Shown here: piece by piece, positions 1 through 54,377 of the stretch
How positions within the stretch are numbered: position 1 is the stretch's first letter
How the letters are laid out: each line of letters starts with the position of its first letter
Assembly (NCBI RefSeq): GCF_048593235.1
Contig: NC_133620.1
Span: 258,045,929 to 258,109,928 of the forward strand
Source: Sminthopsis crassicaudata
Lineage: Eukaryota
DNA length: 64,000 bases
Direction of reading: 5' to 3'
Notes under the pieces: model-generated
Databases searched by the model: none
What the model was told of the DNA's origin: nothing
The model's input: the letters and a program-made list of their open reading frames with translations, nothing else
Position numbers and translations under genes: made by a program

Positions 1-177
1 CTTCCCTTGATTTTCTATTAGTATTTAACATACCTTATTGGCTGCATCTTTCCCTTAATCTCCAGCTTGTATCCTTTGTGGCAATTTAAGTTCAGTCCCT
101 CTTTTTCTTTTCTCAATGGAAGAGAAAGAGCAGCTGGTGACTGGTTTCTATTGCCGATTGTAACAGCCTTTTTGGGC

Positions 178-340
178 AGGATCCTATCTGACAGCTGGAA
201 GGGACCCTGGAGGTCATCTAGTCCAACCAGTCTCCCAATGTAAGAGTCCTGACAGATGGTCTCTCAACCTTAAACATTTCCAGTGATGGACAATTCATGA
301 CATCCTGAGATAATGCAGAACCAACTTTGGAGGTTGGTTT
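178..340 (-). mobile_element. CR1/L3 LINE 3' end fragment
   Basis: agctggaagggaccctggaggtcatctagtccaacc ... catttccagtgatgg is the reverse complement of the typical L3/CR1 3' terminus. Confidence 0.7.
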
Positions 341-1100
341 TCTGTGCAGAAAAAAAATGTCCCTTGCTAGGCTTGTCTTATATATGTGAAAATAGCAAAA
401 CAAACAAGCAAGTAATCAAAACCCTAGGAAAAAAAAACAAAAAAAGTATTTAAAAATAACAATAACAGTAATAATAATTTCATAAAGTTGCTAGTATCTC
501 AGAAGTTTTCTTCCAGCTCCACTGTTCTGGGGATATGCTTTCTGAGGTGGTAATATGCTATAATTGGAGGGACACTGGAATTGAGGTAGAGATAAGGGCT
601 GGAATCAGTCCCCATTTCAATAACTTGCTAGCTATGTGACTGTGGCCAAATCCCTTGTCTTCTTTGTTTTCTTGTCTGTGAAATGAGAGGGTTAACCATC
701 TCCACTCCAGATCTGTGAATCTCTCATTTATGGTATTTTGCCCCTTGCCATATTAGGACAAAAGTACTTGAGTATTGCTGTATTTTGGGGACACAGATCT
801 CCTATATACTGAGAAATTTGGCTTCTCTTCACCTTCTTCCACCCCCACGTATCGTATGACACTACAAGAAGTATCTTCTCACATTTCCTTCAATCCTCAT
901 CTGATGAATGATTCTGTGATGAAGCATACTGGGTAACACTAGAGTTACTATGCATGGCAAACCCAAAGTTTATCATCAGATGTTTTCCAGTTATGGAAAA
1001 CTTGCAGGATAATAGTTCTGATATTATAATATTTCATATTTCCTTTGTGTCTCAGCTTTGACTTTTTCTTCTAATACCCAGGTACTTTCTAGCTTTCTAT

Positions 1101-1495
1101 AGCTAGATGGTCTAGTGGGTAGAATACTGTACTTACAATCAGGAAGACCTGGGTTCAAATTTGGCCTCAGACATGTACTAGCTGTGTGATGCTGGACAGA
1201 TCACAACCCTTCTTTGTCTCATTTATAAAAAGGGAATAATAATAGCACCTAAAACATTGGTATATATGTAACTGTTTTACATTTCCAGTTGTTAAATCTA
1301 ACACAATAAATAATTCATTTTTTCTGTCTTTGTTGGATGGAATGATTAAAAAGAATTTTAAGGGGCCAAAAAAAAAATAAATAATAGCACCTATCTCCCA
1401 GAATTGTGAGAATCAAGGAAGATGGTAATTATAAAGTTCTTAGCATCATGATTGGCACATAATAAATATGCTCTATAAAAATGGTAGCTATTATT
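1101..1495 (+). mobile_element. CORE-SINE (MAR1/MIR-like), interrupted by a 128-bp insertion at 1252-1379
   Basis: tRNA-like head (agctagatggtctagtgggtagaa...aggaagacctgggttcaaat), core (gctgtgtgatgctggacagatcac) and tail (aatagcacctatctccc...ggcacataataaa...gctattattat). Confidence 0.8.
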
Positions 1496-1576
1496 ATCAT
1501 TATCATTATTATCATTTACTATTATTACTATTATTGTTATTAGTATAATTCCTATTATTATCATTATTATCCAACT

Positions 1577-1725
1577 TTAGACACTTACTGGCTGTGTGAT
1601 CCTGGACAAGGAATTTAATCGCTACTTGCCTTGTTTCCTCTTTTGTAAAATGAAGTGAGATGATATTTGTAAATCACTTAGTGAAGTCCCTGGCACATAG
1701 TAGGCTCTAAATAAATGTTCATTCC
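1577..1725 (+). mobile_element. CORE-SINE (MAR1/MIR-like) fragment
   Basis: ttagacacttactggctgtgtgatcctggacaag ... tgtaaaatga ... tggcacatagtagg core and tail motifs. Confidence 0.75.
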
Positions 1726-1960
1726 AATCTCTCCATTCGTTCATGCTTAACACAAATTCTCTTCTCATTTCTGCATACATCCATAGCCATTGAAAGGTGC
1801 CTTCCTTCCTAACTCTCTAACATGAAGGTAGATTTCATCAAAGATTGAAGCAGACCTCTAAATGGCTAGCTTTGGGATATATTATCAATCTCATAAGAAG
1901 AAAAAGAATGGTTATAGAAGTGAAGGAGATCAGAGCTCCTCACTATTAATAGCATAAGGG

Positions 1961-3380
1961 ATGCTTCCAATCCTTCACCAAGTGGAGAGAGGACATCTTA
2001 GAGTTTCTAGACCAATTCAGGTTATTCATGCTCTGCCCTCCTTGGGAGATCCCTGCAGCCTGGACTTCATTGCATTGTTTGATGGGACTGACTACTGGTT
2101 GGTCTGATAGGAGATAGCCTTGATCAGACAGTATAGAGATAAAATATATTTTAGGATGTGTCCTACATCTATTTTTGGTCTGAAGTTGGCTCACTTGTGA
2201 TTTATTGACTCTGGAAGGGGCAAGGGACCATAGTAGAATATTCCACTTCCTTCTAGGGTCTGAAACAGCACAAACTCTTCTTGGAACAGAATATTTCCCC
2301 ATTTATTGGATCAATTATTTTATGTTTAAAAAAAAAAAAAAAGAGGACACCTTGGGGATAAGAAATTGTCTTTTTTTTTTTTTTTTTTTTGCTTAGCTCA
2401 GGTACCGGCAAACAATAAATGCTTTATGAATACTTTTTTCATTCATTAAAAAACAAACATTTTCCCTTCTGTAATGACTTAATGTAAATAAATGGCATCA
2501 AACCTTATCTTAATTCCTGGAGAAAATTGTGGAATTCTGATTATGCATTTGTAGTTCAATATGACACTGGGAGCTTTATTTTCTTTTTGTTTATTCTTAC
2601 CTTGCACCATATTCCAGGCTCTTTTGAGGCATGACCCTATCAATCACCATGGATAAAGAACTATTGACAATAGTCCCTTCCCTAAGTATCTCTAATCTCA
2701 TCAGTTCTTATAGCCCACCTTGTGGCCATTTGTTTCTCACTCTTGAAATTCAACTTCTAAGCCACCAAGAATTGCAGATCTCAGCTATGGTGGATTCAAG
2801 GGATTGTAGATTTTGTGAACTGTTTCCACTCCAAGACAGCAAATGTTGATTTAACTCTGTGTCTATCCAGTTATAGTAGGAATACCCATAGTGAATGCTA
2901 TTCACTACAGTCCAGAGAGGTGACCTAGAAGATGCTGCTTAAGTCCAAGAAGGGAGAAGCATTGTAAAATATCCACCATGAATGTAATCCTTTCCTCCTT
3001 CTTCTTGATGGTTCTTTGGATTAAAAGGATTTTAATACATAATTTAGCCTGAAATTGCTTTATCTTCAGTGCATAATTTCTTTTTTGGAGAGATTGGAAT
3101 AGTCATAACAATTGGAAAAAGTCCCTAGTCCTCTGTTTTGTTGATCACCTCCCATCATAGCTTCAGTATCATTAATTAAAGAGGAGAAAATGGAGTTATA
3201 ACTCTGCCATAATCACAGAATCCAAAATGTTATTATCATCTGGTATCAGTATCCCCAGCCTTTGATACCCAGGTCTGCTTTATCAGTTAATGAGACAGTA
3301 ATATGCTCCATCTTAGTCCATCTGATCTCGATATGGGAAGGTAACAGATGGAAGATAGCTTTCTAGCTATGGCATGTCCT
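1961..3380 (+). mobile_element. Decayed Ty3/Gypsy (sushi-ichi/PEG10-like) retrotransposon internal region: gag, aspartic protease and RT N-terminus
   Basis: Manual translation. Gag: SFTKWREDILEFLDQFRLFM..LMGLTTGW (1971-2102) and IY*LWKGQGTIVEYSTSF (2200-2253). Protease: HLFLTLEIQLLSHQELQISAMVDSR (2727-2801), IVNAIHYSP (2888-2914) and MNVILSSFFLMVLWI (2978-3022). RT: L*LCHNHRIQNVIIIWYQYPQPLIP...HLISIWEGNRWKIAF (3196-3363). Motifs are in canonical order on one strand, with stops and frameshifts. Confidence 0.85.
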
Positions 3381-3834
3381 GCATTAATACTACTGTTGGT
3401 AGAGAGAACATTATAGCAATAAAACTACAACAGTGTAAGGTCATGTGAATATATTCAAAAAGTGCTATAAGCAAGAAGTGATAGGTTCAAGATACCATAC
3501 ATTTTTGGACATGACTCCTGTGTGAATTCATTTTGCCTGAAAAGGGTGCATTTTAAAAAATGCACACAAGAGAATAAAAAGAAGTTAAGAAGGAAACACA
3601 GACAAACAAGACAGAGACCAGTAACCCTGAATGGTCTTCAAGACTCTGTTCTGAAATCTCTTCTCTTTTCCCTCTATACTATCTCACCTGGTGGTTCCCT
3701 AATTTCTTATGAGTTCAGTTATCATCTCTGTACTAATAATTCCCATATACATTTAGTCTTAATCTGTTTCCTGAGGACTAGTCTTTTTAAAAAAGTAGTA
3801 TTTATATTTTTTTCAATTACACGTGAAGACAATT

Positions 3835-4235
3835 TTTAACATTCATTAAAAAAATTTTAGTTCCAAATTTTCTTTCTCTCCTCTTGGTAAGAATTTTAAA
3901 TAGGTATGTATGTGCAATCATGTAAAATAAATTTCTGTCTTAATCATGTTAGTAAAGAAACATACCAAAATGGGAGAAAATCATAAAAAAGATAAAGAAA
4001 GTGAAAATAGTATATTTCAATCTTTATTCAGACTCCATCAATTCTTTTTCTTGATGTGGATAGTATTTTTTATCATGAATTTTTTGTAATGTCTTGGATC
4101 ATTGTATTGCTGAAAAGAGCTGAGTTATTCATAATTGATAATCACCCAATTGTGTGTGCAATTTTCTCCTGGTTCTGCTCACTTCACTTTATATCAGTTC
4201 ATGCAATTCTTTCTAGGTTTTTCTGAAATCTGCCT
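3835..4235 (-). mobile_element. L1 3' end (marsupial L1)
   Basis: ttttaacattcattaaaaaaattttagttccaaattttc ... ggttctgctcacttcactt, the reverse complement of a marsupial L1 3'UTR. Confidence 0.75.
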
Positions 4236-5425
4236 ACTGAACTCTAGTCTTACATTAACTCTCTTGGATATCTTGAACTGGATGTCCAATGAACTTCTCA
4301 AACTCAAGATATTTAAACAAAACCTATTATTTCCCCCTTAAATCATCCCCTCTTCCAAATTTCTTTATTGGTATTAAGGTCCACACCAGCCTTTTAATTA
4401 CCTAAGCCCACCACATCAATATCTTCCTTGAATCCTCATTGGCACTCTCCCCACAGATCCAATCTGTTCCTAAATGTCATTTCCATGTTCACATTTCTCA
4501 TACATGTCTAATTTTGTTTTCTTTGTTTTTGAGAGGCAATTGGGACTAAGTAACTTGCCCAAGGTCACCTAAATAGGAAGTGTTAAGTGCCTGAGATCAA
4601 ATTTGAACTCAGGATACAGCATTGGCTGTATCCACTATACTATCTAATTGCTCCACATATCTAATTTTCTCAACTCACACAGCCATTACCTTGATGTAGG
4701 CCCTCATCATCTTACAGCTAGACTGTTCTAATGAATAGCAGTCTGATTGATCTTCCTGTCCCAAGTTTCTCCCCCCTCCAGACTATTCTTCACTTATTTG
4801 CCATAGTGATTTTCCTAAAAAGTAGGTCTGTCCAAGTTACCCTTTCCCCTTCCTTCCTTTTTTACCCTGCTCTAAACACCAGTGTCTTTCTATTATCTGT
4901 AGGACCAAATATAAAATCCTCTGGTTGGCTTTTTAAAGATTTTCACAACCTGTCCCTTCATGCTTTTAGGCTTTTTTAATACTTTATTTATTTCCACATA
5001 ATCTACAACTATCCAGCCATACCAGCTATTTTTTTTTTTTTTTTGCTGTTTTTAGATCCATCTTCTGATGCTATGTCTTTTTATCTGTTTGCACCCTTAC
5101 CCCACTTCCCATCCCTGCAATATTCTCTCTCTCCTTATATCTGCTGGCTTCCTAGCTTCCTTCAAGTCTTAGTTCAGATCCCACCTCTGCAGGAGGATTT
5201 TCCTGGGACTTCTTTTCCTCTTACTGCTAGTTCCTTTCCTTTGAGATTATTTTCTACTTAAACTCTATGTATATTGGACATAGTTTTTTGAATGTGATTT
5301 CTTCCATTAGTATGTTAGTTTCTTGAGGGCAGGGACCATGTTTTCAACCTTTCTTTGCATCTCCAGTGCTGAGCACCCTGGTGCAGAGTAAGTATTTAAT
5401 ATTTAATAAGTGCTTGTTGACTTGA
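4236..5425 (+). mobile_element. L2 LINE 3' portion (interrupted by a SINE)
   Basis: ggatgtccaatgaacttctcaaactcaa, cctaaaaagtaggtctg, and the 3' terminus cttgagggcagggacc...aataagtgcttgttgacttgact. Confidence 0.75.
4516..4654 (-). mobile_element. WSINE1/SINE1-type marsupial SINE with 14-bp TSD
   Basis: gaggcaattggg...acttgcccaaggtcac...caaatttgaactcagg, flanked by acatgtctaatttt (4502-4515) and acatatctaatttt (4655-4668). Confidence 0.8.
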
Positions 5426-7344
5426 CTTAAGTGAAATAAAGAATTGAAAAAATAACTTTCAAAGATGACCTGCTTGCCTATATTTCTTTCTGCCTTCCTT
5501 TAAAAGATACTCCAATGTCTGTTCTCTTTTTCTTTCTTGGCAGCCATATTATGACTATCTCCTATCTTCCTCTCATCTCCCCAATGCGGAAAAATAAAGA
5601 AAGAAAAACACTTTTAACAAATAATCATACTCAGCAAAACAAATCCCCTCAGTCTTTATTAATGTTCATTAGTATATACCCTATACTTATTGTTTTGAAA
5701 GATGCTTGAGTCCATTGAGAAGATAATGATTTGGCTGAGTCAGATAGCCAATATCTTTCAGAAATGGGATTTGAACCAAAATCTTTCAGTCTTTGGCTAT
5801 CTTTTAATCTATTAGGCCAAGTGATCTTTCCCAGTGCTTGTCCCAAGGACATACAGCTACTAACTGTTCTTTGCCCCCAAAGTCAGCACTCTTTCTGTTG
5901 TTGTGCTGATGGAGAAGAGGAGAGGAAGTCCATCTCAAATATAGTCAGATAATATAGCCTGTAATTCATATTTTGTAAATTAGGCTCTAATTTATTTATT
6001 CATGGGGCAAAATTTCCTGAAGTATAAATTTCCTTGTAGTGAGTGAGGCCCTTTTGGAAGTTTTGGACATTTTCTTGTAAGTTTAAGTATCCTAAATGTA
6101 GGATAGTTGATATGGTTTCACGAACCTGGATTTGTAATGAAAGGATCTAGATTCAAAATCTAGATAATAGTTGTGTGGTTGGTCATCAATAGAAGGAGCC
6201 ATGTCATATTCATTATCAAAAGATACAGTAGGATCCTTGGATAAATTAGAGATGGGAAATGGACTGCCAATCTATTGGTACTAATGCAGCACTGGATACA
6301 GTCCAGCCTTTCCAGGTTGGACGACAGCAGGACACTTAAGACTTTTTTTGTGTCAAGTTAAATTAAGTGTGACTATAAGCAGGGTGGGCAAAAGAATAAT
6401 GGAGAGACCCAGTGAAGAGCTAAACAATTTAGGGCAAGGCAGACATTAGTAGTTGGAAATGCAAAATGACAGAATTTGAAAGATCCTAGTAGCTCCAAAA
6501 TTTGATGAGTCTGTAGATTAAAAGTTACTTATTTTAAACATAGGATTCATGCCTCAAATGGAACAAAAAAACAAGGATACAGAATTATAAACAGCCAATA
6601 GAACAAACATTGAATCATTATTCAGTGAACAAATTGTTAGCATTACTGGCAAAATGACTGCGGATTAGTGTCAGGTTTCAATTTAATAAGCATTTACTGT
6701 ATCTGAGGTACTGACAAGATCCAGATCTAAGACTCTGTTCTCCTATTTGCCAGGCATCATTCTGGGCCCTGGGGATAGAAAGAAAAAAAAAAGTAAATAC
6801 TCATATTCATAGGAAATAATACATTCATAGAGTTTTCTATAATTGAGTAGATTTTGGGGCTTAATATATATGTTTGTATATATGTATGTATGTTTGTATA
6901 TATGTATGTATATACTCTTGGAAGACTGAGCATCCCCAATAGGCAGGTTTATACTTATTGGTTGTCAGTTAATGAGAAAATGAATATTAAAATGACATGG
7001 GCCTATGCTAATCAGGGGCTAGGGGATTTAACTTTGTTTATGTCACTATTAGTTCTAGACTACTCCTAGCCTCAGACAATCCAGACAAAAGGATCTTGTC
7101 CAACCATGCACTCCCAGTCTGAGTAGAACACAATGGGCCAGAATTCACCTATATTAGATTCTTTTTACTCTTTAATAAAAATTAAATTTTCCCAGCTGGG
7201 TGGGGTCTAAACAAGATTGAGAACAATGTTAAATCTAATCTCATCATCAGCCCTATTCTTCAGAGGCTGAGTTGACCTAGTAGAGAATGAGGAAATAGGT
7301 AGAGAAAAAAATCCTAGGTATCTCAAATAATAATTTGTTATTGA

Positions 7345-7756
7345 TGTAAGATGAAATAATCATCTCTCTCACTGTGCTCTTTTGTCTCAATTAGAGTCGA
7401 GAATCGGCTCTAACCTTGACCTTTATAATCATGGGCACTCTCAATTAGAATTAGGATGATGTATTATGAAAGGGCAACCCTTTGCCTTGGGGGGCCAGAA
7501 ACTGCCATTTGAAAATGAAAGATAATCTGGGAGCCTTCATCAGGGGAGACCAGAAAGACAGAAAAGTTCTTTCATCCACAGCAACAATAGTAGCAACAAT
7601 GGTAGGAGATTAGCAATGGTAGGGAGGATGAATCATCTTGGCCAGGGTTCATGATTAAGTCCAGTGTTAGTTCTTCACCCAGGATGGAGAAGTAGCAGGG
7701 GTTATAAGCCTACTAGTTTCTCCTGCAGAGACCTTGGCCTGAACCAGTATGTTACA
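7345..7756. mobile_element. Possible solo LTR
   Basis: 412-bp non-SINE/LINE segment bounded by TGTAA...TTACA inverted termini; no TSD found. Confidence 0.3.
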
Positions 7757-8513
7757 AGATTGGATATCTTCAAAGATATCATATCATATTTACAACCAAG
7801 AAAGCATTCATGAAAAAAAATTATATAATACATTTTATTTTGTTTGTTTTATTCTGAATTTAAACAGCAAATTTTAAAAATCCCACATACAGAGCAAAAA
7901 AAAAAAAAAAAGTTCTATATGAAACCAAAAATTTCCATTTTATATCTGTTGCTTTTTAAGAGTATATAATAAATTCTATACCTTATTTTCAAAATTTCCT
8001 GTTTGTGTTTCCTTTTTAACTTTTTTTCTATTCTCTTGTGAACATTAAAAAAAAAAAAAATGTTTCAATGGTCCTCCATTGAAATGGCAAAATGGAGAAC
8101 TCTGGATTAATTTGCTGGCTCTAACCACTACCTATATGACCATAGGGAAATTGCTTTATTTTCTGGGATTTAGTTTCTTCATCTATAAAATAAGGGATTT
8201 TAGCTAGCTTATATAAATATGATATCTTTTAAAAAACAAGTTATCTTAAAGAATCCTTGACAAGTATGGGATTATCAAATGCCTTGAGTCAATTGTTCTC
8301 AAACTTTTTGGTCTCAGGACCTCATTAATACTCTTAAAAATTGTTAAATTTTGTATTAGAAATTAAAATGGGTAATTTTAAAAAGTTATTAATTGATTTA
8401 AAGTAATAATCAAATGCTAATGTGCTAATGTGAATAGCATTTTTATAAAAATAACTATTTCCAAAACAAAATAATTCAGTGGGAATAGTGATATTATTTT
8501 ACTTATTTTTCCA

Positions 8514-8658
8514 NNNNNNNNNNNNNNNNNNNNNNNNNNNNNNNNNNNNNNNNNNNNNNNNNNNNNNNNNNNNNNNNNNNNNNNNNNNNNNNNNNNNNNN
8601 NNNNNNNNNNNNNNNNNNNNNNNNNNNNNNNNNNNNNNNNNNNNNNNNNNNNNNNNNN
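8514..8658. other. Assembly gap (145 N)
   Basis: Run of N. Confidence 1.
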
Positions 8659-8659
8659 A

Positions 8660-8810
8660 GATTTGTCTTCATATGTTCAAATGTGACCTCAAACACCTAA
8701 CAGCTGTGTATCCCTGGACAAGTCACTTAACCTTGTTTGCCTCAGTTTCCTCATCTGTAAAATGAGCTAGAGAAAGAAATGGTAAATCACCTTAGTATCT
8801 TTGCAAAAAA
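8660..8810 (+). mobile_element. MAR1 SINE (CORE plus RTE tail)
   Basis: cagctgtgtatccctggacaagtcacttaacc...ctcagtttcctcatctgtaaaatgagctagagaaagaaatggtaaatcac..agtatctttgc. Confidence 0.8.
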
Positions 8811-8842
8811 AAAAAATTTAAAAAAAAATATATATATATATG

Positions 8843-8875
<33 letters not shown>

Positions 8876-9769
8876 TGTTTTAGTTAAGTGAAGAAAATCT
8901 GGATTCACATTGATATGTAGTTGGAAAGGGGAGAATTATTTTAATCAGCAAACAATGTCTTACTTATTGTCATGAAAAAAAAGTTTTGACCTTCTCAGGA
9001 AATCCCCGAAATGATCTGGGATCTATAGACCATTATTTGAAAATGGTTGTCCTAAGTAATTCTTCTGTTAAATTTTTTTCCAAGAACCCCACCCCCCCAT
9101 CAAATATGGCAATGAAAAAATTCCTCTAACTTCAAACAATGAATACCTATCTAAAATCTGGAGTGAGAATAGATGTGAAATTAGGATTAGCTAAAGGAAA
9201 TAACACTGATTGCTAACATTTTATATTGAGATTTAAAGTGTTATAATACATCAATTCATTTGTTCCTCATAACATCTCTGGGAGTTAGGTGCTTTTGCAG
9301 AAGAGGAAACTGAGACTAAGAAAATAATTTGCTGAAGGTCACAGACTAAAAAATTTCTTAGAAAAGATTCAACCAGATATTTTGCTGACTCCAAATGCCA
9401 TTCCCATGCTATTTCCCAGTGAGACTGGTACTAATATTTGGAAAATAGAATGTTGACACTCTAAGTTGTCTTTTTTTTTTTTAAACATTTAAATCTTTTT
9501 CAAAATAGTAATTTAAGAACAGGCAATGAATATGAATAAGAGCTCTCTTAAATCAAATAAGAGAGATATTAGGTTATTTTAATTTGGTTTGTTCAAGAGC
9601 AGAATGATCCTACTCAATTCTGATTTTTTTAGATATTATACTTAAGACCCAGATCAATATTTTATAGCCAAGGGTATATAAATATCAGGAGGGGTCTTTG
9701 GTTTATGAGAAATAGCCAAATGACCATCCTTTTTTAATGAATTGAACCCAAGACTGTTCTTTTCTTTAA

Positions 9770-10590
9770 AAACATTTTTATTATTATATCTTTTTATTTG
9801 CAAAACATATGCATGTATAATTTTTTTCAACATTGATCCATGCAAAACCTTTTGTTTCAAATTCCCCCCTCCTTTTCCACACCCCTCTCCTAGGCAGGTA
9901 GTCTAATACATGTTAAATCCAATATATATATATATATATATATGTATATGTATATGTATATATATATATATTTATTTATTTATTTATACAGTTATCTTAC
10001 TATTCAAGAAAAATCAGATCTAGAAAGAAAAAAAAACCTGAGAAGGAAAACAAAAATGCAAGCAAACAACATAAAGAATGGAAATGCTATGTTGTGGTCC
10101 AAACTCAGTTCCCATAGTCCTCTTTCTAGATATAGACATCTCTCTTCATTACTGGACAATTGGAACTGATTTGAATCATCTCATTTTTAAAGAGAGCCAC
10201 GTCCATCAAAATTGATCATCATATAGTTTTGTTGTTGCCATGTACAATGATCTTTTGGTTCTGCTCATTTCACTTAGCACCAGTTCATGTAAGTCTCTCT
10301 GGGGTTCTCTAAAGTTATCCTGCTGATGTTTTCTTACAGAACAATAATATTCTATAACATCCACATACTACAATTTATTCGACCATTCTCCAACTGATGG
10401 GCATCTACTCACTTTCCAATTTCTTGCCACTACAAAAAGGGCTGTCACAAACATATATGTCCTTTTCCCTTTTTTGTGACCTCTTTGCTATAAAGGCCCA
10501 GTAGAGATACCTCTGGATTAAAAAGGATGCAGTTTGATAACTTTTCGAGCATAGTTCCAAATTTCTCTCCAGAATGGCTGGATTCATTCA
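9770..10590 (-). mobile_element. L1 3' end (ORF2 C-terminus and 3'UTR), 5'-truncated
   Basis: gcaaaacatatgcatg...ttttttcaacattgatccatgcaaaa 3'UTR motif; the ORF at 10405-10587 (ERNLELCSKSY...) resembles frameshifted L1 ORF2 C-terminal sequence. Confidence 0.85.
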
Positions 10591-12535
10591 CAGTCAAGAT
10601 ACTATTCTTTATTCCTTCAAGATGCCCTGCCTCCCCATTGTGGAATGCTGCTGATATAGGAGGATAGTTGTCTTATTCATCTAGGAATTTTATTTTTATG
10701 TGAACTATGAATGTCCTCCCCATTCTTTCTCTAACTTCCTTGGTTACTTGCTACCTGGGTAAATTGGGAGCTGCCCAGGCCAACTTACAATACATTGTGT
10801 GCAGCAACCCTGTAACTGAAACACTGCAACTTTGGGAGCCCTAATATGGAAGAAATTGTGTTTGGCTATCATCTCAGAATTTACCAACCAATAGATCTTC
10901 CCAGGATGATAGTGGCCTAGTTTTGGGATTAAATTAAGCCTTCTTATGGCAAATCTAATTTCATTCCTGGTGATGTGTCTACCTCAATCTTTAACAACCC
11001 TATGTCTATTGAATCATTCCTTCTCTTGGTATGGAAACTTGATTGAAGCTTTTCCTGGACTACCAATTATTATTGCTTTTTCACTCTTCAAATTAGCATG
11101 TATATACTGATCTAGTTATATGTGCTACATCCCCCCACCTCTCCTGGTATAATTTAAGTTTTCCCAGCAAGGACTGTTTTCCATCTTATCTTTGTATCAC
11201 CAATATCTAGAAAAGTATTTTACATACAGTAGATGCCTCATAAATACTTGCAAAATTGGCTATATTGAAAGAGTAGTAATTATAAGAGAGGAATAGGCAG
11301 TCCAGAAAGTTCTAAGCTCCCATCATAAGCAATATACCAGAACTAGCTATAGAGAAGTAGAAAGAATATTGCATTTGGCATGGGCAGGATTCTAGCCCAT
11401 CTGACACTTATGACTTGTTAATCTTGAGTCAGTCACTTAAAACTCCTAAAACTTAGTTTTCTTGTCTGTGAAATGAGAGAGCTGGTCTAGATGACCTCTA
11501 AAGTCCCATATAGCTTTAAATCTATTATTTAAAAAGCAAAATAAAAAAAAAACCTAAGGTTACAGAAGTGGGGAAGAAAACTGTATAACACCCTCCCAGC
11601 AAGTCAAGATGGAGTTCCTGGAAGATATTCTAGGAGGAAAGATGACTTTACAATTCATAGAAGTGTCCATTTGATTAGACAAGAAAGACATATAGATTGT
11701 ACATTACAATAATGAAAAAAAATTTTAATTTTAGGTAAATTTTAGGTAAAGAATGTTTATAGGACAAACCATCATTTCAGGATTGTTTTGATTATCTCTC
11801 TCCTTGTTAATATTTTTCACCCTATGCTCTTTAAGGAGGTTAACTTGTCCAGTTTAGGAATCAGAGTGCTGAATATAATAGTGGTGAATTTAATTTCCTT
11901 GCTGCCTTGTCTTTATGGATGCAGTGCTTCAAGATGAATGACCTCAACTGGATTTTGTAACTCAGATTCCTCAACTTTGTTTCCTTCCCCAGGAAGATGT
12001 TTTCCATGTATTCTCTATGATTTCATTAGTGTAAGAGAATTAGTAGTGTGGACATACTTTCTACCAATGCTTTAAAATATATTTTTAAGAATTCTGACCT
12101 TAACAAACAGTAAATAACATTATATGCAAAAGGGAATTGAAATTGTCATTTCCATTATTCATAGCTTGCTTTTCCTTTGTGACATTGTTCTCCTCTGGTT
12201 CTCCTCTTACCTGTTTGACCACTTCTCATTTTTTGCTGGCTCTGAGACCAAAAAGTTTGAGAACTATTAATTGGTATTTGCTAATACCATAGCTGTCAAG
12301 GATTCTTTAGAATATCTCTTCTTCTTCTTTTTTTAAGTCATCATATTTAGGACTGGAAGATATTTAGATATAATCTAGCTGAAAGAATTTATTTTACTCA
12401 TGAGAAAACTAGAGCCCAGAGAAATAAAGCAATTTGTCTGGGGTCACATAGGTAGTGGTTAGAGCCAGAAATTCATTGCACTTTCTCCTATTCTATATTG
12501 TTCACACTATTTTCAACTTCCACATAAGGGTAGAT

Positions 12536-15323: not shown

Positions 15324-17825
15324 TGATGGAATATAGCTTCTAGGAAAGAGAGCACTAGGGAGATCCCCCCTGACCTTGGTGCTTCTGTACTAATAATTAA
15401 TCTGTCATTGATTCTAAATTCTTCTGGTTTTGGAATCTGTGATACTGAGGTTCCCCCCTCAACTTTGGAGTGCTATTATTCTGACAAACTGTCCATCAAT
15501 GATTGTAAAAGTCTTCTGGCCTGGGAATATAATAATAGCCCCACCTAAAATCTTTTATACTATACATTGATGAAAGGAGAGGCCAGATCCTAGGGGTCTA
15601 GACTCAATCTCTGGAACCCTATTCTAGACCTTTGCTTACTTCTCAAAGAAACTTGGTGTTTTGGGGATGACCTTATTGTCGAGCTAGCTGCCACAGCTCT
15701 TATAATTGAGGAAGCCTCTAAGCTCACCCTAGGCCAATTATTGGAGTTTCTAATTTCCCAGAGGGTTCAGAGCATTTTTGCCCTCACAGAGTTTTAGAAT
15801 TCTAAAAGGAATGAGAAAGGAATGACATCTATACTGATTCCAAACTTTCATGTTTTATATGGAAAAAAAAGAGATTTTTGACAGAAAATAAATAAATAAT
15901 TCATCCATTAAATATGCAAGGGAAATTCTACAATTATTGCAAGCTGTCCATGGACCTTGAGAGGTTTCTGTTATGTTTTGTAAAGGACACCAGAAGGTGG
16001 ATTCACTTCGGGCCAAGGGAAACAGGTTTGCAGATTCAGCTGCTAGTGCTGCTGCCTTTGTTTGCTTCTGACCATGGCACCTTTAATTCCTCAACTCCCC
16101 AATTCTACACTCTTTCATAGTTCCCAGGAACAGGTCCTTTGCTAAAGAAAGGGGGCACACCCTTTTTCCTTCTAGGTGATTTCAAACACCTTCAAGCCAA
16201 CTTCTAATCCCAAACCCAGCCAGTGGAAACTTCTCTTTAGCCTATACCAATCTACTCACTTAGGGAAAAAATGCTCTCCAATCCCTTGCGAAGAAACAGT
16301 CAAGTAGATCTGTCAAATCTGCCCAGTTGTGCCCAAGTAAATTTGGAAAGGGCTGTTAAATTCCCCATCCTGAACCCTATCTGGAGGAGGGATACACATT
16401 TAGGGATGGACTGGCAGATAGATTTTACACCTACCCCCTCTCAGGGGTTTCAAAGTGCTTTTGGTTTTTGTTGTCACCTTCACTAACTGGGTAAAAGCTT
16501 TTCTTCCCTTGTAAAACTGAAAAGGCTCAGAGATTTTTGTTAAAGGAGGTCAAATTCATTTAAGATTAATTATCTCCACAATGCATGTCATCCTCTCTAC
16601 CCAATGTTTAATGCCTTTTAAACATTATGGTACTTGAATTCTAAGCCACCTGAACACTCCTTTTACTGTGTATAATGCCACACTATTCTATCCATTACCC
16701 CTACTCCTTTGAGGAGACAAAAGCAGGGATTTGGGGAAGTGTTCTTTGCTATAAACCCTAGGAAAAGCTGTCTGAATGTGAGACATTCATGGTAGCCTTA
16801 TCTACTCACCAAGTCTTCCTCTGTGTGGGGTTCCTGGTTACTGTTCTTGGTAACCTCCATACTAGCTCCACTTTTAATTATTATTATTATTATTTTTTGC
16901 TCATATTTGGCCCTTGTATTTTTAACCTTTTTGTGAGATTTGTTTCTTCTGGGCTCCAAGCTATAAATTTCCAAACTGAATAGCATTAGCTATCTGATTC
17001 TGACACTCAGCACCCTTCTGAGTGCTGCTGCCATCTTCAAGTTGCATTCCTCCCCTACTCAGTCTGGACCCTAACTAGTCAGGGACAGCTCTACATGTCT
17101 TATGAGCATGAAGTAGCTCCAGAAAATGAGATCTCTGTCCCTTTATTCCAAATGAATTGGGGGTTCAAACTGCTTGAGAGGGACATGATGAAATATAGCT
17201 TCTAGAGGAGACAGCATTAGGGAGGTCCCCTTGACCTTGGGGTGCTTCTGTTCTAACAACCTATCAGTGATTCTAAAGTTTTTTGGCTTTGGAATCTGTT
17301 ATCTTGAGGTTGTCCCCCTCCCCCAATCTTGGAGTGCTATTGTTCTGGCAATCTGTCCATCAATGATTGCAAAAGTCTTCTGGCCTAAGAATATAATAAT
17401 ACTTCTTCCCTTACATTTTAGGGAAGATATATTATTAATCCTGAGGCCTTCTGACCTTAGAATGCTATCATCATGTTATTGTTCTAACAATCTGTCAATG
17501 ATTTCAGTGTCCTACAGACATTACTGTCAAGTAGTTAATCTGTTGGTCAGTGATAACCAAGTTCCTGAGACAATAGTGAAAGGAGCTCCCTTCAAACCTA
17601 CTTGTAAGACATAAAATTAGCAAATAAGTAAGATGAAGCTCTGATCAACTTTGTATATATACAAATACAATAGATTTATAAATCTATCTTTTTTTCTCTT
17701 GGGTCCTTTGCTAAATTCTTTTGGAACTTAGCCCACTTCAATTGGCATTACAGTTCCAATAAACTTTGCCTCTTGACTTAGATATAAGTTCAAACCTGCA
17801 AATTCTTTTGAATTACCTTGCAACA
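15324..17825 (+). mobile_element. Internally deleted class I (gamma-like, ERV1) provirus with two LTRs
   Basis: LTR homology between 15324-~15545 and 17186-~17400. Pol remnants AATALIIEEASKLTLGQL (~15687-15740), CKGHQKVDSLRAKGNRFADSAA (~15978-16045) and DWQIDFT (~16408). Env TM remnant LLIFGPCIFNLFVRFVSS (~16897-16950). Purine tract before the 3' LTR, AATAAA at 17758, terminus caaca. Confidence 0.9.
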
Positions 17826-50610: not shown

Positions 50611-53600
50611 TAGTTGAGCTTAATGTTATGTACATAATACTAATTTAGATATTACTTGTCTTTGTATATTTATATAGAGGAGGAGAATATTTGTGGAACT
50701 GAGTATATTTACTTTGCTTCCATTGGGAGGAACAAAAACTTTGGCTTTACTATTGGATCCTGATGGGTTTTTATGTGTCTCCAAGGTTAAAGGGTGAGCA
50801 TGTTTCCTTCCTCCCTGAGCCAAAGTATGAACGCTCAGATCCATGATAAGTACTCTAGTTCAATCTCTCTGCTACACAAATAAGGTGAAACATTAGGCTC
50901 TGGTCTCAAAGACTTTATAAGTTTAAGCAATACAAGATTTAATGACATCCTGATAACATATATGCCAATCAAAAAACATTATGCACTTACCGTGTGTGTA
51001 TGCCACTGTGCTAAGTGCTGGGAATATGAAGATAAAATAAAAAAGATAGTCCTTGTCTTCAAGTAGTTTACATTCCAGCACAAGTGGACTGAGCTGTCAA
51101 TTGAAGGGATCTACAATCCTTGGATACAAAACTGGAAGAGACCTAGAAATCATTTAGATTTCCCAATCATTTTCAAAGCATTCAATCTGCTCTCTGTTAA
51201 TGACTTCCCCCAGGTCATCGAGGTAGGGGAATAACAGAGATGGTAGCCCAACCCAAGTCCTCAGAAACTAATAATTATTCTTTCCATTAGGACTAATGTA
51301 AAAATAATTCACTCATAAATTATCTCATAAGCATGGCAATGTAGAGGGATAGGATATTATTATAGAAAGAATAGTTCAGACTGGGATTCAAGAAGTTGAA
51401 TCAAGAAGATTTGAACTGAGAGATTCAGAACCTACATTTGACATATACTGGTTTTAGATCCTGGGAAAGGCACTTAATCTATCAATATTCCTAAATAATT
51501 CTCTAAGATTTAAGTTGCAGAATAATTTCCAGTTTGCTTTGGTAGAGGGAATTTCTTCACAGTGGTTTCTCTATGTCAATGAAAACATAGGTCAGGTCCA
51601 AAAAAAAAAAAAAAAGGCATCAAAATGTGTATGAAGTAATAACTGACAAATGGGGGAGCTAGTGGAGAATAAAACCTTGGAGAATGAATGTTGGAGAATA
51701 AGAGCCCCTCCTTTTATTTTGAATATTCAATCATCAGAAAATTTGTTTTCTTCCTCTCCTACCTTCCTATATACTATTGGGGGGGGGGAAGAAAAGTAAA
51801 ACAAAACTCTTATATCAAATATTAATAGTCAAGCAAAACAAATCTCATTGGTCATGCCTAAAACATCTCATTTTGTAACCTGGATCCACAATAGCATGGA
51901 TAGCATGCTTCTTCATTGGCTCTCTGGAATCATGTTGGTCAATAGAATGATCAGTTAAATTTTTCCAAAGTTCTTTGTCTCTATAGTTTTTTATTATAAA
52001 AATTATTTTTCCTGTTCTGTTCTTTTAATTCTACATATTTTCATGTTCATCTTTCCAGATTTCTCTGAAAAATCCCTTTAGCTATTATGGCATAATAGAA
52101 TTCCAGTCATTTTCTCTAATTTATTCAACCATTTTAAAATCAACGGGCATCTCTTTAGTTTCCAGCTATTTACCTCTGGGGGGGGGGGGAAGCTGCTGTA
52201 AATTTTATTTGTATACACATATCCCTTCCTTTTTTTCTTTGATTCTTTGAGATATCTAGGCCTTGAAGTAGAATCTCTGAGTCAAAGGGTATGCACACTT
52301 TTGGGGCATAGTTCCAAATTACTCAGAATGGCAGGACCTATTCTCAGCTTCACCAAGGCATCGATGTGCCTGTTTCCTGAAGCTGCTCTAACATTTGTTA
52401 TTTTCCTTTTGTCAGCTTTAACAATTTGATGAGTGGAGGATGATGGGACCTCCAGGTTGTTTTTAACTTATGTTTTTCTAATTATTAGTTAGACATTTTT
52501 ATGAGGCTACTGAAAGCCTGGATTTCTTCCTCTCAAAATTGCCTGTTCATATAATTTGACCATTTATCAATTGTAGAGTGGTTCTAAGGGGAAACAATCT
52601 TAAAAGGCTCAGTAGGCTTTGGAGGACATTAACATGAAACCCATGTTAATATGTTAGGTGTTGGAGAAGGGGAAAAGGATGGAAAAGTTAGTTTAATTAG
52701 CTCCTGGAAAATGGAAGTGCATTCAAGATTGAAGGGAACGGTCCCTTGGTCACCAAATGACTTTAAATTGTCATGAAGAAAGAAGGGAAATGGGTAGCAA
52801 TCTAGGGTAGTGCTGATGCTGTAGCTGCTCGAATTGAATTGTACGTGTGAGACAAACAGAAGGAGCCCGAGTGGTTCTGAAGGCGCGGGTGGGGGGGAGG
52901 TAGGAGGAGGAGAAGGAGGAGGAGGAACCTGGATGGGCTGATAAGTCCTCAGTAGGGCGGGTTCTGGGATGGGCCATCGGGAGACAGCTGGAGCGCAGGC
53001 GCCGCTCCTGCTGTCACAGCTCTGAGCTGTGGGGCCACCTGCAGAGGCAATTTGCTCTCCTCTGCAGCTCGTCCCTTGGGAGGCTTCTCAGTGGCACCCA
53101 GGCCTTGAACTGGCCAAACAGATGCTCCAGATTAGACGAAGGCAGAGACGACCCCCTTATTTCACTAGGCTGGGAAAAATTATTTCCCACCCCTTTCTCC
53201 TCCTCCTTCTCCTCCTCCTGGGAGGGCAAATGCAGCCGCCCTCGCTTGCCCCTTTGCATGACTGGGTTTCCAGGACACCTGTTGTGGGTCCCAAATAGCA
53301 ACCTCGCCTTTTGGGTTCCGGGGCCGGCCTGCTGGTCTCCGGGAGTGGGCGTGCTTAAATGAGGTGATAAACCAGGGTGGAAAGAGTGGGCTGCAGAGAG
53401 AGGCGGGGAGAGCTGTCCGAGCCAGGGGGCCCTGCAGCATTACATTGAAGGGAGGGGCCGAAGCCCTGGCGGACCTTCTCGTGCTCTACTCCCTTCCATC
53501 TCCTTTCTTTCGCTCTCATCCTCCGCCGAAGCACCCACCCGCCTGCTGCCTTTGCTTCTGCGGCGGCCCGAAATGCCGCAATTGAAAAACGCATCCCAGA

Positions 53601-54091
53601 GCTCAGGCAGGATCTCTTTCCCCTTGTGAGAAACCGAGCATCTTTGCATTGCTCCTTCCGCAGGGTGCGGAAGAAAAGAAGAGTGAGTGGGCACCTCTCC
53701 TGATCCGCCTTCCCCGTCGGCGTTCTGCAGTGGAGTGCAGTGCTTACCCCGCTTTCTCCTCTTCAGCCTGGCTCTTGGCGTTCGCGTGGCCCCTGTGCGG
53801 ACACTAGCCCAGCCGGTCCCTTAAGTCACCGCCCCCTGGCGCACAGTCGGGTTCCCATTGGAGGCTAGGCCAACTGCTCGGGCAGCCAGGCTGGGGAGGG
53901 GTCCTGGGCGTGTCTTTGGACCTCTCTGGGCCGACACTGGCCTTGGGCTTCAAACCTTCTACCCCTTCTGCAGTTTTCTTCCCCTTCCCCTTCTCTAGGT
54001 CCTGGAGGCTGCTTGTGGATTCCAGCCTCGGGGGCCGGTGGGGAGGGGGGAGAGCTGAACTCATCTTTCAGCTTTGAAAGGAACTTGAGCC

Positions 54092-54182
54092 ATGGCGGGT
54101 TACCTGTCCCCGGCTGCATACCTTTACGTAGAGGAACAAGAGTACCTCCAGGCTTATGAAGATGTCCTGGAGCGATACAAAG
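54092..54182 (+). CDS. DST: Dystonin alternative first coding exon (isoform-1 N-terminus): [30 protein letters not shown]+G
   Basis: Strong Kozak gagccATGG; 91 nt; donor AAG|gtaccg in phase 1; matches the recalled DST isoform-1 N-terminus; shorter than the ORF-track cutoff. Confidence 0.97.
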
Positions 54183-54359
54183 GTACCGTGACTCCGCTGG
54201 TTTCGGACCTGCTTGGGTACTGCCCTGTATTTCCTTCCAGGGACAGCTCTTAAGGATTTATTTTACATTATTGGGGGGGAGGGAAAAAGGAAAGAAAGAA
54301 ACCCTAGAACCTTTGGTTAAAAGTAAACAGGTGTTAGGACCAATAGTGGTGCTGATAGT

Positions 54360-54377
54360 GGGGCGGGGGTGGGTGGG
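54360..54377 (+). other. Canonical G-quadruplex motif GGGGCGGGGGTGGGTGGG
   Basis: Four G-tracts with 1-nt loops, ~180 nt into the intron. Confidence 0.7.

What the first reader, a model, noticed from the sequence alone, without database searches (positions are those of the whole stretch)
1961..3380. Hidden sushi-ichi/PEG10-like Ty3/Gypsy fossil (gag-PR-RT) in a DST intron
Manual translation across stops and frameshifts recovers collinear motifs of the lineage that gave rise to PEG10/RTL/SIRH genes. Gag REDILEFLDQFRLFM...G-x4-W...IY*LWKGQGTIVEYSTSF compares with recalled PEG10 PDML.PFM.QCQIFM...GRAARW...IRRLRQGMGSVIDYSNAF. A protease and an RT N-terminus follow. None of this is visible as a long ORF. 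The parental retrotransposon is extinct in mammals and known mainly through domesticated genes (therian PEG10, eutherian RTL/SIRH genes, marsupial SIRH12). A non-domesticated gag-pol relic would document the source family in the marsupial lineage.
Basis: partly seen in the sequence, partly recalled or inferred. Interest (0 to 1): 0.8.

Follow-up and report, generated by a model that had tools for sequence, protein, structure and literature searches.

The report
Dead PEG10-like Gypsy retrotransposon relic
This stretch is the badly decayed remains (capsid, protease and the start of reverse transcriptase) of an ancient Gypsy-type retrotransposon of the same family that gave mammals the PEG10 gene; it is real, but dead relics of this kind are already known in mammals.

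Summary
On the + strand, 1986-3363 holds collinear remains of gag, protease and the reverse-transcriptase (RT) N-terminus of a Ty3/Gypsy element. They are broken by roughly ten frameshifts and seven stops.

- **RT N-terminus (3145-3363):** more than 20 vertebrate Gypsy polyproteins hit it by tblastn, best E=2e-7, and nothing else in the 64 kb is hit.
- **Whole-window null:** in my frameshift-aware scan of both strands, the protease active-site strand ranks 1 of 2132 bins. Gag part B ranks 1 and gag part A ranks 2-3.
- **Chain test:** a spacing-constrained gag-gag-PR-RT chain scores z=13.
- **Link to PEG10:** a marsupial PEG10 contig aligns collinearly with almost constant spacing from gag to the protease end. 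It also matches at DNA level (69.5% over 82 nt; 0 of 200 shuffles reach it).

Pfam and PDB see nothing, even on X-joined read-throughs. No RT core, RNase H, integrase, zinc knuckle or LTRs remain.

Its novelty framing is overstated: MamGyp-type fossils, degenerate sushi-like gag copies in wallaby and many ancient Gypsy protein fossils are published. I cannot tell whether this is an independent insertion of PEG10's source family or an ancient PEG10 paralogue.

The scan flagged six other Gypsy fossils in this genome. One was followed up as a PNMA-type relic.

The parts
1986..2104 (+). gag part A (capsid N-terminal region, DUF4939/PEG10 type): ..EDILEFLDQFRLFM..P..P......L..L.TGW
   Evidence: Aligns to marsupial PEG10 gag residues 2-45 and to sushi-like gag references. 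Bins 2041-2160 rank 2-3 of 2132, z about 3.4. Shuffles 2/500. No Pfam hit.
2168..2326 (+). gag part B (..FG..L.KGQG.IVEY..SF....WN....LLDQ..), read across 2-3 frameshifts and 2 stops
   Evidence: Bin 2281-2340 ranks 1 of 2132, z=4.9. The gag-only A-then-B chain is the best in the window. PEG10 gag B: 0 of 1262 null bins reach it. Spacing from A to B is 37 codons, against about 42 in references.
2328..2390 (.). A15 run (2328-2342) and T20 run (2371-2390) inside the fossil; low-complexity spacer of unknown origin
   Evidence: Read directly.
2397..2726 (+). Place where the capsid C-terminal part, CCHC knuckle and gag/pol frameshift site should lie; nothing recognisable is left
   Evidence: PEG10 gag C-terminus/NC scan z=0.2. 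No CCHC pattern and no GGGAAAC.
2727..2798 (+). Protease N-terminal strand and active-site motif (HLFLTLEIQ..ELQISAMVDS, then a frameshift)
   Evidence: Rank 1 of 2132 bins, z=8.6, next unrelated bin z=4.6. It is the top bin for 15 of 59 references. Shuffles 0/500, z=7.
2799..3043 (+). Rest of the protease: YPVIV (2864) = PEG10 WPVLV; SSFFLMVLWIKRILIHN (2984-3040) = PEG10 SPFFPVVLGVRWLTQHN; 4 frameshifts and 2 stops over the whole PR
   Evidence: Constant offset to PEG10 contig L001, about 1967 nt. nhmmer aligns L001 950-1052 to 2914-3019 as the second-best hit in the window, E=0.61. On protein scores alone this part is ambiguous, rank 7-41.
3044..3138 (+). PR-RT linker, about 170 nt shorter than in marsupial PEG10 and about 45 codons shorter than in autonomous references
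   Evidence: Offset to L001 changes from about 1967 to about 1795. No significant similarity (z=1.5).
3139..3363 (+). Reverse transcriptase N-terminus (S.P..A.V.LIK......LC.N.R..N.I....YP.PLIP ... EGNRWKIAF), with one in-frame stop and a 5-codon gap
   Evidence: tblastn hits from more than 20 references, best P0034 (Naja naja Gypsy) E=2e-7, 35% over 78 aa. z=16 against the window null. Shuffles 0/500, z=18.7. Marsupial PEG10 RT remnant z=13.3. DNA level 69.5% over 82 nt to PEG10. nhmmer E=0.017 to king-cobra Gypsy.

Best explanation
Window 1986-3363 (+) is a dead, neutrally decaying internal fragment of a Ty3/Gypsy (Metaviridae) LTR retrotransposon. It belongs to the vertebrate sushi-like group that also gave rise to PEG10 and the RTL genes.

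**How it arose and what is left.**
- Shown: what survives is the capsid part of gag, the aspartic protease and the first two motif blocks of RT.
- Shown: everything downstream (RT catalytic core, RNase H, integrase, chromodomain) is gone. So are the zinc knuckle and the LTRs.
- Shown: the reading frame is broken about every 30 codons.
- Inferred from established knowledge of the family: an element copy was reverse-transcribed and integrated into the germline of a distant ancestor.
- Inferred: the fragment has no present function and works as nothing.

**Most likely origin.** It is an independent insertion of an autonomous member of PEG10's source family that was later truncated. I put this sub-reading at about 0.5 and an ancient PEG10 paralogue at about 0.3. 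The stated confidence is for the general statement.
For: - **References are genuine.** They are gag-PR-RT-RH-INT Gypsy polyproteins with DUF4939/Retrotrans_gag, RVP_2 and RVT_1. They come from snakes, frogs, fish and Anolis, and include RTL1 and marsupial PEG10.
- **RT.** The RT N-terminus is hit by more than 20 references and nothing else in the window is.
- **Four ordered parts.** All four parts rank at or near the top of the whole window, in the right order and spacing, chain z=13.4. Shuffles agree.
- **Closeness to marsupial PEG10.**
  - One collinear gag alignment, 33/104 identical.
  - PR 28/99 identical.
  - RT remnant 26/49 identical.
  - The offset is nearly constant over about 1050 nt.
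  - The DNA-level hit is unmatched by 200 shuffles.
  - The W..Q residues before YP.P occur together only in marsupial PEG10 among the 44 YP.P-motif matches found in the reference proteins.
- **An autonomous-type RT once existed.** EGNRWKIAF matches EGDEWKTAF of autonomous elements. PEG10 ranks 33rd of 37 in this sub-stretch.
- **Age.**
  - The fossil is 31-37% identical to references that are 60-97% identical to each other.
  - Its composition equals the flanks, with CpG observed/expected 0.04.
  - A second species holds 15% of its 31-mers.
Against: - Pfam and PDB detect nothing, even on X-joined read-throughs of gag, PR and RT. All support therefore rests on close reference proteins and on my own alignment statistics.
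- The gag signal is modest, z 3.4-5. The best gag references were partly chosen after seeing alignments.
- No LTRs, zinc knuckle, RT YxDD core, RNase H or integrase were found, so most defining parts of an LTR retrotransposon are absent.
- The phylogenetic position is unresolved: the terminal branch is 2.8-5.5 changes per site.
Confidence: 0.88

Rival explanations
1. It is an ancient paralogue of PEG10 itself. That means a duplicate or retrocopy of an already truncated gag-PR-partial-RT unit, or a second insertion of such a truncated non-autonomous element, which then decayed. It would not be the remains of a full-length autonomous element.
For: - Detectable homology ends at 3363. That corresponds to about 11 codons before the stop of marsupial PEG10 ORF2.
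- No downstream pol is present anywhere in 64 kb.
- Spacing to PEG10 is nearly constant from gag to the PR end.
- The best local score in 3130-3292, when frameshifts are allowed, is with marsupial PEG10: 92 against 76.
- DNA identity is 69.5% over 82 nt.
- It shares W..Q before YP.P with marsupial PEG10.
Against: - The fossil keeps the ..EG..WK.AF RT block in the autonomous form, which present PEG10 has lost.
- The PR active-site part scores higher with RTL1 and other elements (49, 47) than with PEG10 (34-41).
- It lacks about 170 nt of the PEG10 linker.
- No slippery site remains.
- Closeness to PEG10 is equally expected for a sibling insertion of the same family.
- The king-cobra Gypsy also matches at DNA level.
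- The locus is not the PEG10 locus (SGCE-PPP1R9A) or the SIRH12 locus (ENC1-RGNEF) described in PMC3158469.
Confidence: 0.3
2. It is a chance resemblance: motif-like strings picked by eye from three frames of AT-rich intronic DNA.
For: No Pfam or PDB hit for any piece or read-through. The word-indexed search found nothing.
Against: tblastn E=2e-7 with more than 20 concordant references. Whole-window ranks of 1 for RT, PR and gag B, and chain z=13.4. 0/500 shuffles for RT and PR. A DNA-level hit to PEG10.
Confidence: 0.01
3. It is a fossil of an endogenous retrovirus (ERV class I-III) or of another Gypsy lineage such as the PNMA/Gypsy12_DR type, rather than the sushi/PEG10 type.
For: ERVs are abundant in marsupials. 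Another follow-up in this genome found a PNMA-type Gypsy pol fossil (s1-189965).
Against: - The read-through RT piece finds no retroviral or Ty3 RT chain in the PDB.
- The RT block has the Gypsy form ..C.(D)YR..N..T....YP.P.I.
- The gag aligns to DUF4939/PEG10-type gag and to PEG10 itself.
- There is DNA-level similarity to PEG10.
Confidence: 0.03
4. It is an exapted, still functional element (a conserved non-coding or regulatory piece derived from the fossil).
For: It is shared with a second species at about 94% identity, inferred from 15% shared 31-mers. Many ancient TE protein fossils survive because they were exapted (PMC9004415).
Against: The k-mer share in the PR-RT core (0.15) is close to that of the wider stretch (0.09), so there is no sign of special conservation. 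Composition and CpG depletion equal the flanks. Decay is heavy and uniform.
Confidence: 0.04

Closest known systems
Marsupial PEG10 (contig L001; proteins P0165, P0006, P0166, Sarcophilus-type)
   Same: Same order and almost the same spacing of gag capsid, protease and RT remnant. Gag 32% and PR 28% identical; the RT remnant is up to 53% identical. It shares W..Q before YP.P. There is a DNA-level match of 69.5% over 82 nt. Homology stops near PEG10's ORF2 end.
   Different: The fossil is full of stops and frameshifts. It has no slippery site or zinc knuckle left and lacks about 170 nt of the PEG10 linker. It keeps the EG..WK.AF RT block that PEG10 lost. It lies at another locus.
Autonomous sushi-like (vertebrate chromovirus-type) Gypsy elements of squamates, amphibians and fish (P0034 Naja naja, P0077 Ophiophagus, P0025 family of Anolis, P0079 Leptobrachium, P0011)
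   Same: Gag of DUF4939/Retrotrans_gag type, then RVP_2-type protease, then RT. The RT N-terminus is 31-37% identical over 71-78 aa. nhmmer E=0.017 to the king-cobra element.
   Different: Those elements are intact or nearly so and continue into RT core, RNase H, integrase and chromodomain. None of these is detectable here.
MamGyp-int, MamGypsy2-I and associated MamGypLTR families (Repbase/Dfam ancient mammalian Gypsy fossils)
   Same: The same kind of object: rare, very old, non-domesticated Gypsy remains in mammalian genomes (PMC5753468; MamGypsy2-I is listed in PMC11353194).
   Different: Whether this copy belongs to one of those families could not be tested, because no Dfam or Repbase library was available.
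SIRH12 and the three 'degenerated' sushi-ichi gag hits of tammar wallaby (Ono et al. 2011, PMC3158469)
   Same: Marsupial sushi-like gag sequences with multiple nonsense mutations, found by TBLASTN with sushi-ichi Gag.
   Different: SIRH12 lies between ENC1 and RGNEF and is gag-only. The present fossil also keeps PR and the RT N-terminus. Identity with one of the three unnamed degenerate wallaby contigs could not be checked.
Ancient Gypsy protein fossils found by frameshift-aware search (Frith 2022, PMC9004415)
   Same: Highly degraded Gypsy coding remains that are invisible to standard tools and recovered only by frameshift-tolerant protein-DNA alignment.
   Different: Those were reported for human, alligator, turtle and other genomes, and many are exapted. 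This is one locus in a marsupial-type genome with no sign of constraint.

Membership tests
Ty3/Gypsy (Metaviridae) LTR retrotransposon | Gag with capsid domain (Retrotrans_gag / DUF4939 type) | tested here: met
   Parts A and B rank 1-3 of 2132 bins, in order and with the reference spacing. One collinear alignment to PEG10 gag. Pfam itself finds nothing, so support is moderate.
Ty3/Gypsy (Metaviridae) LTR retrotransposon | CCHC zinc knuckle in nucleocapsid | tested here: not met
   No C..C....H....C in any + frame of 2300-2760, and the NC region scan gives z=0.2. Loss by decay is expected in a fossil.
Ty3/Gypsy (Metaviridae) LTR retrotransposon | Retropepsin-type protease with D-S/T-G active site | tested here: met
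   ..ISAMVDS at 2778-2798 followed by a frameshift. Rank 1 of 2132, z=8.6. 0/500 shuffles.
Ty3/Gypsy (Metaviridae) LTR retrotransposon | Reverse transcriptase downstream of the protease | tested here: met
   The N-terminal blocks are present at 3145-3363, E=2e-7.
Ty3/Gypsy (Metaviridae) LTR retrotransposon | RT catalytic YxDD core | tested here: not met
   The core was not found anywhere in the window.
Ty3/Gypsy (Metaviridae) LTR retrotransposon | RNase H and integrase after RT (Gypsy gene order) | tested here: not met
   Slices of 83 pol segments give no bin near or downstream of the fossil. tblastn gives nothing.
Ty3/Gypsy (Metaviridae) LTR retrotransposon | Flanking long terminal repeats, PBS and PPT | tested here: not met
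   No direct repeat pair flanks the fossil in 1-12000. There is no self-similarity in the window. PBS and PPT were not searched.
Sushi/PEG10-like branch (source of PEG10, RTL/SIRH genes) | Gag of the DUF4939/PEG10 N-capsid type and closest similarity to PEG10/RTL/sushi-like elements | tested here: inconclusive
   All detecting references are of this type, and PEG10 matches at protein and DNA level. No competing Gypsy lineages were available as controls, and the tree cannot place the fossil.
Sushi/PEG10-like branch (source of PEG10, RTL/SIRH genes) | C-terminal chromodomain of the integrase (vertebrate chromovirus type) | tested here: not met
   No integrase or chromodomain remains.
PEG10 gene (orthologue or paralogue) | Locus between SGCE and PPP1R9A; intact ORF1/ORF2 with a -1 frameshift site GGGAAAC | tested here: not met
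   No intact ORF and no GGGAAAC. The only exon-like ORF in the window (46496-46900) looks like a plakin-family 5' exon, from my own recollection, not SGCE or PPP1R9A. So it is not the orthologue. Paralogue status stays open.
Catalogued mammalian Gypsy repeat families (MamGyp-int, MamGypsy2-I, marsupial-specific Gypsy models) | Nucleotide match to the family consensus in Dfam/Repbase | not testable with these tools
   No repeat library is offered. The literature shows only that such families exist (PMC5753468).

The most novel reading that the evidence does not exclude
The fossil is a second, independent copy of the same truncated gag-PR-partial-RT unit as PEG10. Its homology stops within about a dozen codons of PEG10's ORF2 end, and its spacing is PEG10-like. 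That would mean the truncation predates PEG10's domestication, so PEG10 descends from a non-autonomous, already shortened element that was mobilised more than once. Alternatively, PEG10 was duplicated very early in therian or marsupial history. Either way, the copy preserves an older state of the RT remnant than any living PEG10.
Probability: 0.3. Interest if true: 0.55.

Novelty: new member of a known kind. Interest (0 to 1): 0.33.

Why it matters
PEG10 is essential for placental development and is the oldest therian gene domesticated from a Gypsy element. The element family it came from has no living members in mammals.

A decayed sibling copy gives an outgroup very close to PEG10.
- It keeps an RT block that PEG10 lost.
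- It shares PEG10's spacing and some PEG10-specific residues.

It can therefore help to date when the family was active relative to the marsupial-eutherian split. It can also show whether PEG10's truncated architecture arose before or after domestication.

As a single locus it is a modest addition. Ancient Gypsy relics in mammals, including degenerate sushi-like gag copies in wallaby, are already documented.

On method, it shows that Pfam and PDB searches miss such fossils even when read through with X. Close vertebrate references and a frameshift-aware alignment recover them clearly.

Tried and rejected
1. **Pfam on ten stop-to-stop pieces and PDB on three pieces.** Nothing relevant turned up.
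2. **Word-indexed homologue search with the 73-codon protease piece.** Nothing found.
3. **Profile HMMs built from my own MAFFT alignments of the references.**
   - They were weaker than single close references (RT E=0.017, PR E=1.5, gag none).
   - The alignments were probably too gappy, so I replaced them with pairwise frameshift-aware DP.
4. **A 600-nt-bin test with whole gag segments.** It gave gag rank 19 of 212. I rejected this test as too blunt, because long, variable gag flanks inflate the null. Splitting into conserved parts A and B gave ranks 1-3.
5. **An alternative reading of the protease C-part.**
   - In this reading YPVIVGIP..HYSP at 2864-2920 was the ..PVILGIPWL..HNP motif, with a 50-codon internal deletion.
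   - I rejected it in favour of the constant PEG10 offset.
6. **Trees of PR+RT and of RT alone with an X-at-breaks read-through.** The fossil's branch is too long and there is no supported placement.
7. **The third homologue search.** I set it too strict and it returned only Anolis relatives.
9. **The devil PEG10 model P0165.**
   - Its first 330 residues are an out-of-frame translation.
   - They gave spurious hits in the GC-rich 52-53 kb region.
   - I replaced it with contig L001.
10. **The apparent extra PEG10 matches 'SQNP' and 'LLYQL' in alternative frames.** I judged them not decisive after looking at the DNA.
11. **Looking for a CH-domain exon to confirm DST.** None lies in the window.
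12. **The bait for the reference search.** It served only to fetch real database proteins (99-100% matches), and no analysis rests on the typed letters.
Full report
**1. Observation.**
  - REDILEFLDQFRLFM lies at 1986-2030.
  - ..IY*LWKGQGTIVEYSTSF lies at about 2200-2253.
  - A protease-like ..ELQISAMVDS ends at 2798, inside a 73-codon open stretch (2628-2846).
  - An RT-like ..YPQPLIP...EGNRWKIAF ends at 3363.
- Tested alone, the stop-to-stop pieces give no Pfam hit, no PDB hit and no word-indexed homologue.
- Standard tools therefore do not see the feature.

**2. Getting references.**
- It retrieved a real PEG10 fragment, P0001 (99% identical, PF08284).
- An exhaustive phmmer search with P0001 then returned 150 representative relatives.
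- Pfam shows the long ones are true Gypsy polyproteins: DUF4939 + Retrotrans_gag, RVP_2, RVT_1, RNase H, integrase and chromodomain.
- Source names include Naja naja, Ophiophagus hannah, Leptobrachium, Esox, Cirrhinus and Anolis. They also include a rodent RTL1 and a Sarcophilus PEG10.

**3. Is it more than chance?**
- *tblastn.* tblastn of all references against the window gives one significant place only, 3145-3363, frame +1.
  - More than 20 references hit it.
  - The best is P0034 (Naja naja), E=2e-7, 35% identity over 78 residues.
  - The alignment shows the canonical Gypsy RT N-terminus, S.P..PV..VKK.....R.C.DYR.LN..T....YPLPLI.....KTAF.
- *My own alignment.* I wrote a frameshift-aware local alignment and used the whole window, both strands, as the null.
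  - With 600-nt bins the RT bin ranks 1 of 212 (z=11.4) and the protease bin ranks 1 of 212 (z=4.6).
  - With 60-nt bins and conserved sub-segments, the protease active-site part ranks 1 of 2132 (z=8.6; next unrelated bin 4.6).
  - Gag part A ranks 2-3 and gag part B ranks 1 (z=4.9).
The null maximum is 11.4, giving z=13.4. The gag-only A-then-B chain is also the best in the window.
- *Shuffles.* Dinucleotide shuffles reaching the observed score: RT 0/500 (z=18.7), PR 0/500 (z=7.0), gag B 0-1/500, gag A 2/500.
RT and PR are strong and gag is moderate.

**4. Anatomy.**
- Gag A (1986-2104) and gag B (2168-2326) are 37 codons apart, against about 42 in references.
- The gag B motif and the protease D-S are 188 codons apart, against 182 in marsupial PEG10 and about 200-210 in autonomous references.
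- An A15/T20 low-complexity pair sits at 2328-2390.
- Nothing recognisable remains at 2397-2726, where the capsid C-terminal part, the CCHC knuckle and the gag/pol frameshift site should be.
- The protease spans 2727-3043.
  - An early alternative reading of its C-terminal half was dropped.
  - The marsupial PEG10 contig showed a constant offset of about 1967 nt through YPVIV (= WPVLV) and SSFFLMVLWIKRILIHN (= SPFFPVVLGVRWLTQHN).
- The PR-RT linker is about 170 nt shorter than in PEG10.
- The RT N-terminus runs from 3139/3145 to 3363.
- Beyond 3363 no RT core, RNase H, integrase or chromodomain is detectable anywhere in the 64 kb.
- No LTR-like direct repeats flank the fossil, and it has no DNA paralogue in the window.
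- Along the PEG10-guided paths:
  - gag has 3 frameshifts and 3 stops;
  - PR has 4 frameshifts and 2 stops;
  - the RT remnant (3139-3289) has 3 frameshifts and 2 stops.
- The in-frame RT alignment to P0034 instead has 1 stop and a 5-codon gap.

**5. Age.**
- In the RT segment the fossil is 31-37% identical to each of eleven references. Those references are 60-97% (median 71%) identical to each other.
- By a rough inference, this means more than half of the codons have changed, or roughly 0.3-0.4 substitutions per site. That fits a Mesozoic insertion.
- GC content (0.37) and CpG depletion equal the flanks.
- A second, coded species holds 9% of the sampled 31-mers of 1900-3500 and 15% of those of 2720-3370. 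This is seen across four studies.
  - That implies a copy about 6-7% diverged.
  - The fossil therefore predates that species split by far.

**6. Relation to PEG10.**
- A Logan contig of a marsupial PEG10 (L001) carries ORF1 (gag), ORF2 (PR plus RT remnant) and part of the 3' UTR.
- *Protein level.*
  - Its gag aligns to 1989-2314 in one collinear alignment, 33/104 identical.
  - Its PR aligns to 2727-3043, 28/99 identical.
  - Its RT remnant aligns to 3139-3289, 26/49 identical with frameshifts allowed, z=13.3.
- *DNA level.*
  - The best blastn hit of L001 in the whole window is the fossil: 69.5% over 82 nt, 39.7 bits.
  - None of 200 shuffled PEG10 contigs exceeds 35.4 bits.
  - nhmmer gives E=0.0024, plus a second collinear hit in the protease.
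  - A king-cobra Gypsy contig also matches by nhmmer over the full RT N-terminus (E=0.017). A third element does not.
- *Shared residues.* The fossil shares W..Q before YP.P with marsupial PEG10. Among the 44 YP.P-motif matches found in the reference proteins, only marsupial PEG10 has both.
- *Against close descent from present PEG10.*
  - The block EGNRWKIAF matches autonomous elements (EGDEWKTAF). PEG10 ranks 33rd of 37 there.
  - The protease active-site part scores higher with RTL1 and others than with PEG10.
- *Trees.* Trees with an X-at-breaks read-through cannot place the fossil. Its terminal branch is 2.8-5.5 changes per site, and the nearest rows by path are the Anolis family and Naja.

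**7. Interpretation.**
- The stretch is a dead relic of a sushi/PEG10-type Ty3/Gypsy element (confidence about 0.88).
- Two sub-readings remain.
  - *An independent insertion of an autonomous member of PEG10's source family, later truncated (about 0.5).* This explains the autonomous-type RT block and the mixed affinities.
  - *An ancient PEG10 paralogue, or a second copy of an already truncated gag-PR-partial-RT unit (about 0.3).* It is suggested mainly by the end of homology about 11 codons before PEG10's stop-equivalent and by the PEG10-like spacing.
- Closeness to PEG10 is expected under both readings.
- Chance, an ERV or other Gypsy lineage, and exaptation are each unlikely, as set out in the rival explanations.

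**8. What is known.**
- Repbase lists ancient mammalian Gypsy fossils (MamGyp-int with MamGypLTR1-2, LTR85/88 and others). [quoted passage not shown] MamGypsy2-I appears in human TE tables (PMC11353194).
- Ono et al. found PEG10, SIRH12 and three degenerate sushi-ichi gag sequences in tammar wallaby and none in opossum. SIRH12 lies between ENC1 and RGNEF, so it is not this locus (PMC3158469).
- Henriques et al. treat PEG10 as at least about 160 My old, with marsupial paralogues previously described (PMC11011659).
- Frith found 83 pre-amniote Gypsy protein fossils in human, only 3 of them seen by RepeatMasker (PMC9004415).
- Within this scan, six other first-reader notes report Gypsy fossils in the same genome. 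One was followed up as a PNMA-type pol relic.
- This is therefore a new member of a known kind. Whether it matches a catalogued family could not be tested.

**9. Context.**
- The 'DST intron' statement was not verified.
- The window holds an ORF at 46496-46900 whose start resembles, from my recollection, the 5' coding exon of a plakin (DST/MACF1) isoform.
- No calponin-homology exon lies in the window.

**10. Verdict.**
- Novelty is low to moderate and interest is about 0.33.
- The most novel reading not excluded is that the truncated PEG10 architecture existed in more than one copy.

Noticed in passing
window 15324-15537 and 17186-17401 (+): Two copies of a repeat, 81% identical over 221 nt. 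The first has a 56-nt, 75% DNA match to the CCHC/frameshift region of marsupial PEG10 (L001 623-676; 36.8 bits, above all 200 shuffles). The second lies inside a 127-codon ORF (17231-17614). At protein level there is only ..NCPS..KSSG.G across two frameshifts. This may be chance or a scrap of another Gypsy-derived repeat.
   Followed up: partly
window 46496-46900 (+): A 134-codon ATG ORF begins MSSSADFSDEDDFSQ... and contains ..GDTLPWNLPKHERSKRKIQGGSVLDPAERAVLRIA. From memory this resembles the 5' coding exon of a DST/MACF1 (plakin) isoform. No CH-domain exon follows within the window.
   Followed up: partly
window 53001-55000, and 52100-53400 on the - strand: A GC-rich, CpG-rich patch (GC 0.60, CpG observed/expected about 0.5) stands in an otherwise 34% GC window, like a CpG island or promoter. 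It gave strong spurious matches to the proline/arginine-rich out-of-frame part of a PEG10 gene model.
   Followed up: no
window 2328-2390: An A15 run and a T20 run 28 nt apart sit in the middle of the fossil, between gag part B and the lost nucleocapsid region. Their origin is unknown; they could be tails of small insertions or a hairpin-forming indel.
   Followed up: no
window 1946-2302 (-): A 118-codon ATG ORF lies antisense to the gag fossil and is the longest ORF near the finding. The window holds 18 ORFs of 90 codons or more, so it is probably chance.
   Followed up: no
window about 1570-1740 and about 3600-3790: Stretches just upstream and downstream of the fossil look, from memory, like common marsupial interspersed repeats (a MIR/Mar1-like SINE core, and the '..atctctgtactaataattcccatatacattt..' type). 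They may mark the present edges of the relic.
   Followed up: no
window 4155-4240 and 10241-10326: A direct repeat pair of 86 nt at 74% identity, probably two copies of an interspersed repeat.
   Followed up: no
protein P0165 (UniRef Sarcophilus harrisii 'Peptidase A2 domain-containing protein'): The first about 330 residues of this public PEG10 model are the gag region translated in the ORF2 frame (P/R/G/A-rich nonsense). The -1 frameshift was not modelled. Only its C-terminal 300 residues are usable.
   Followed up: yes
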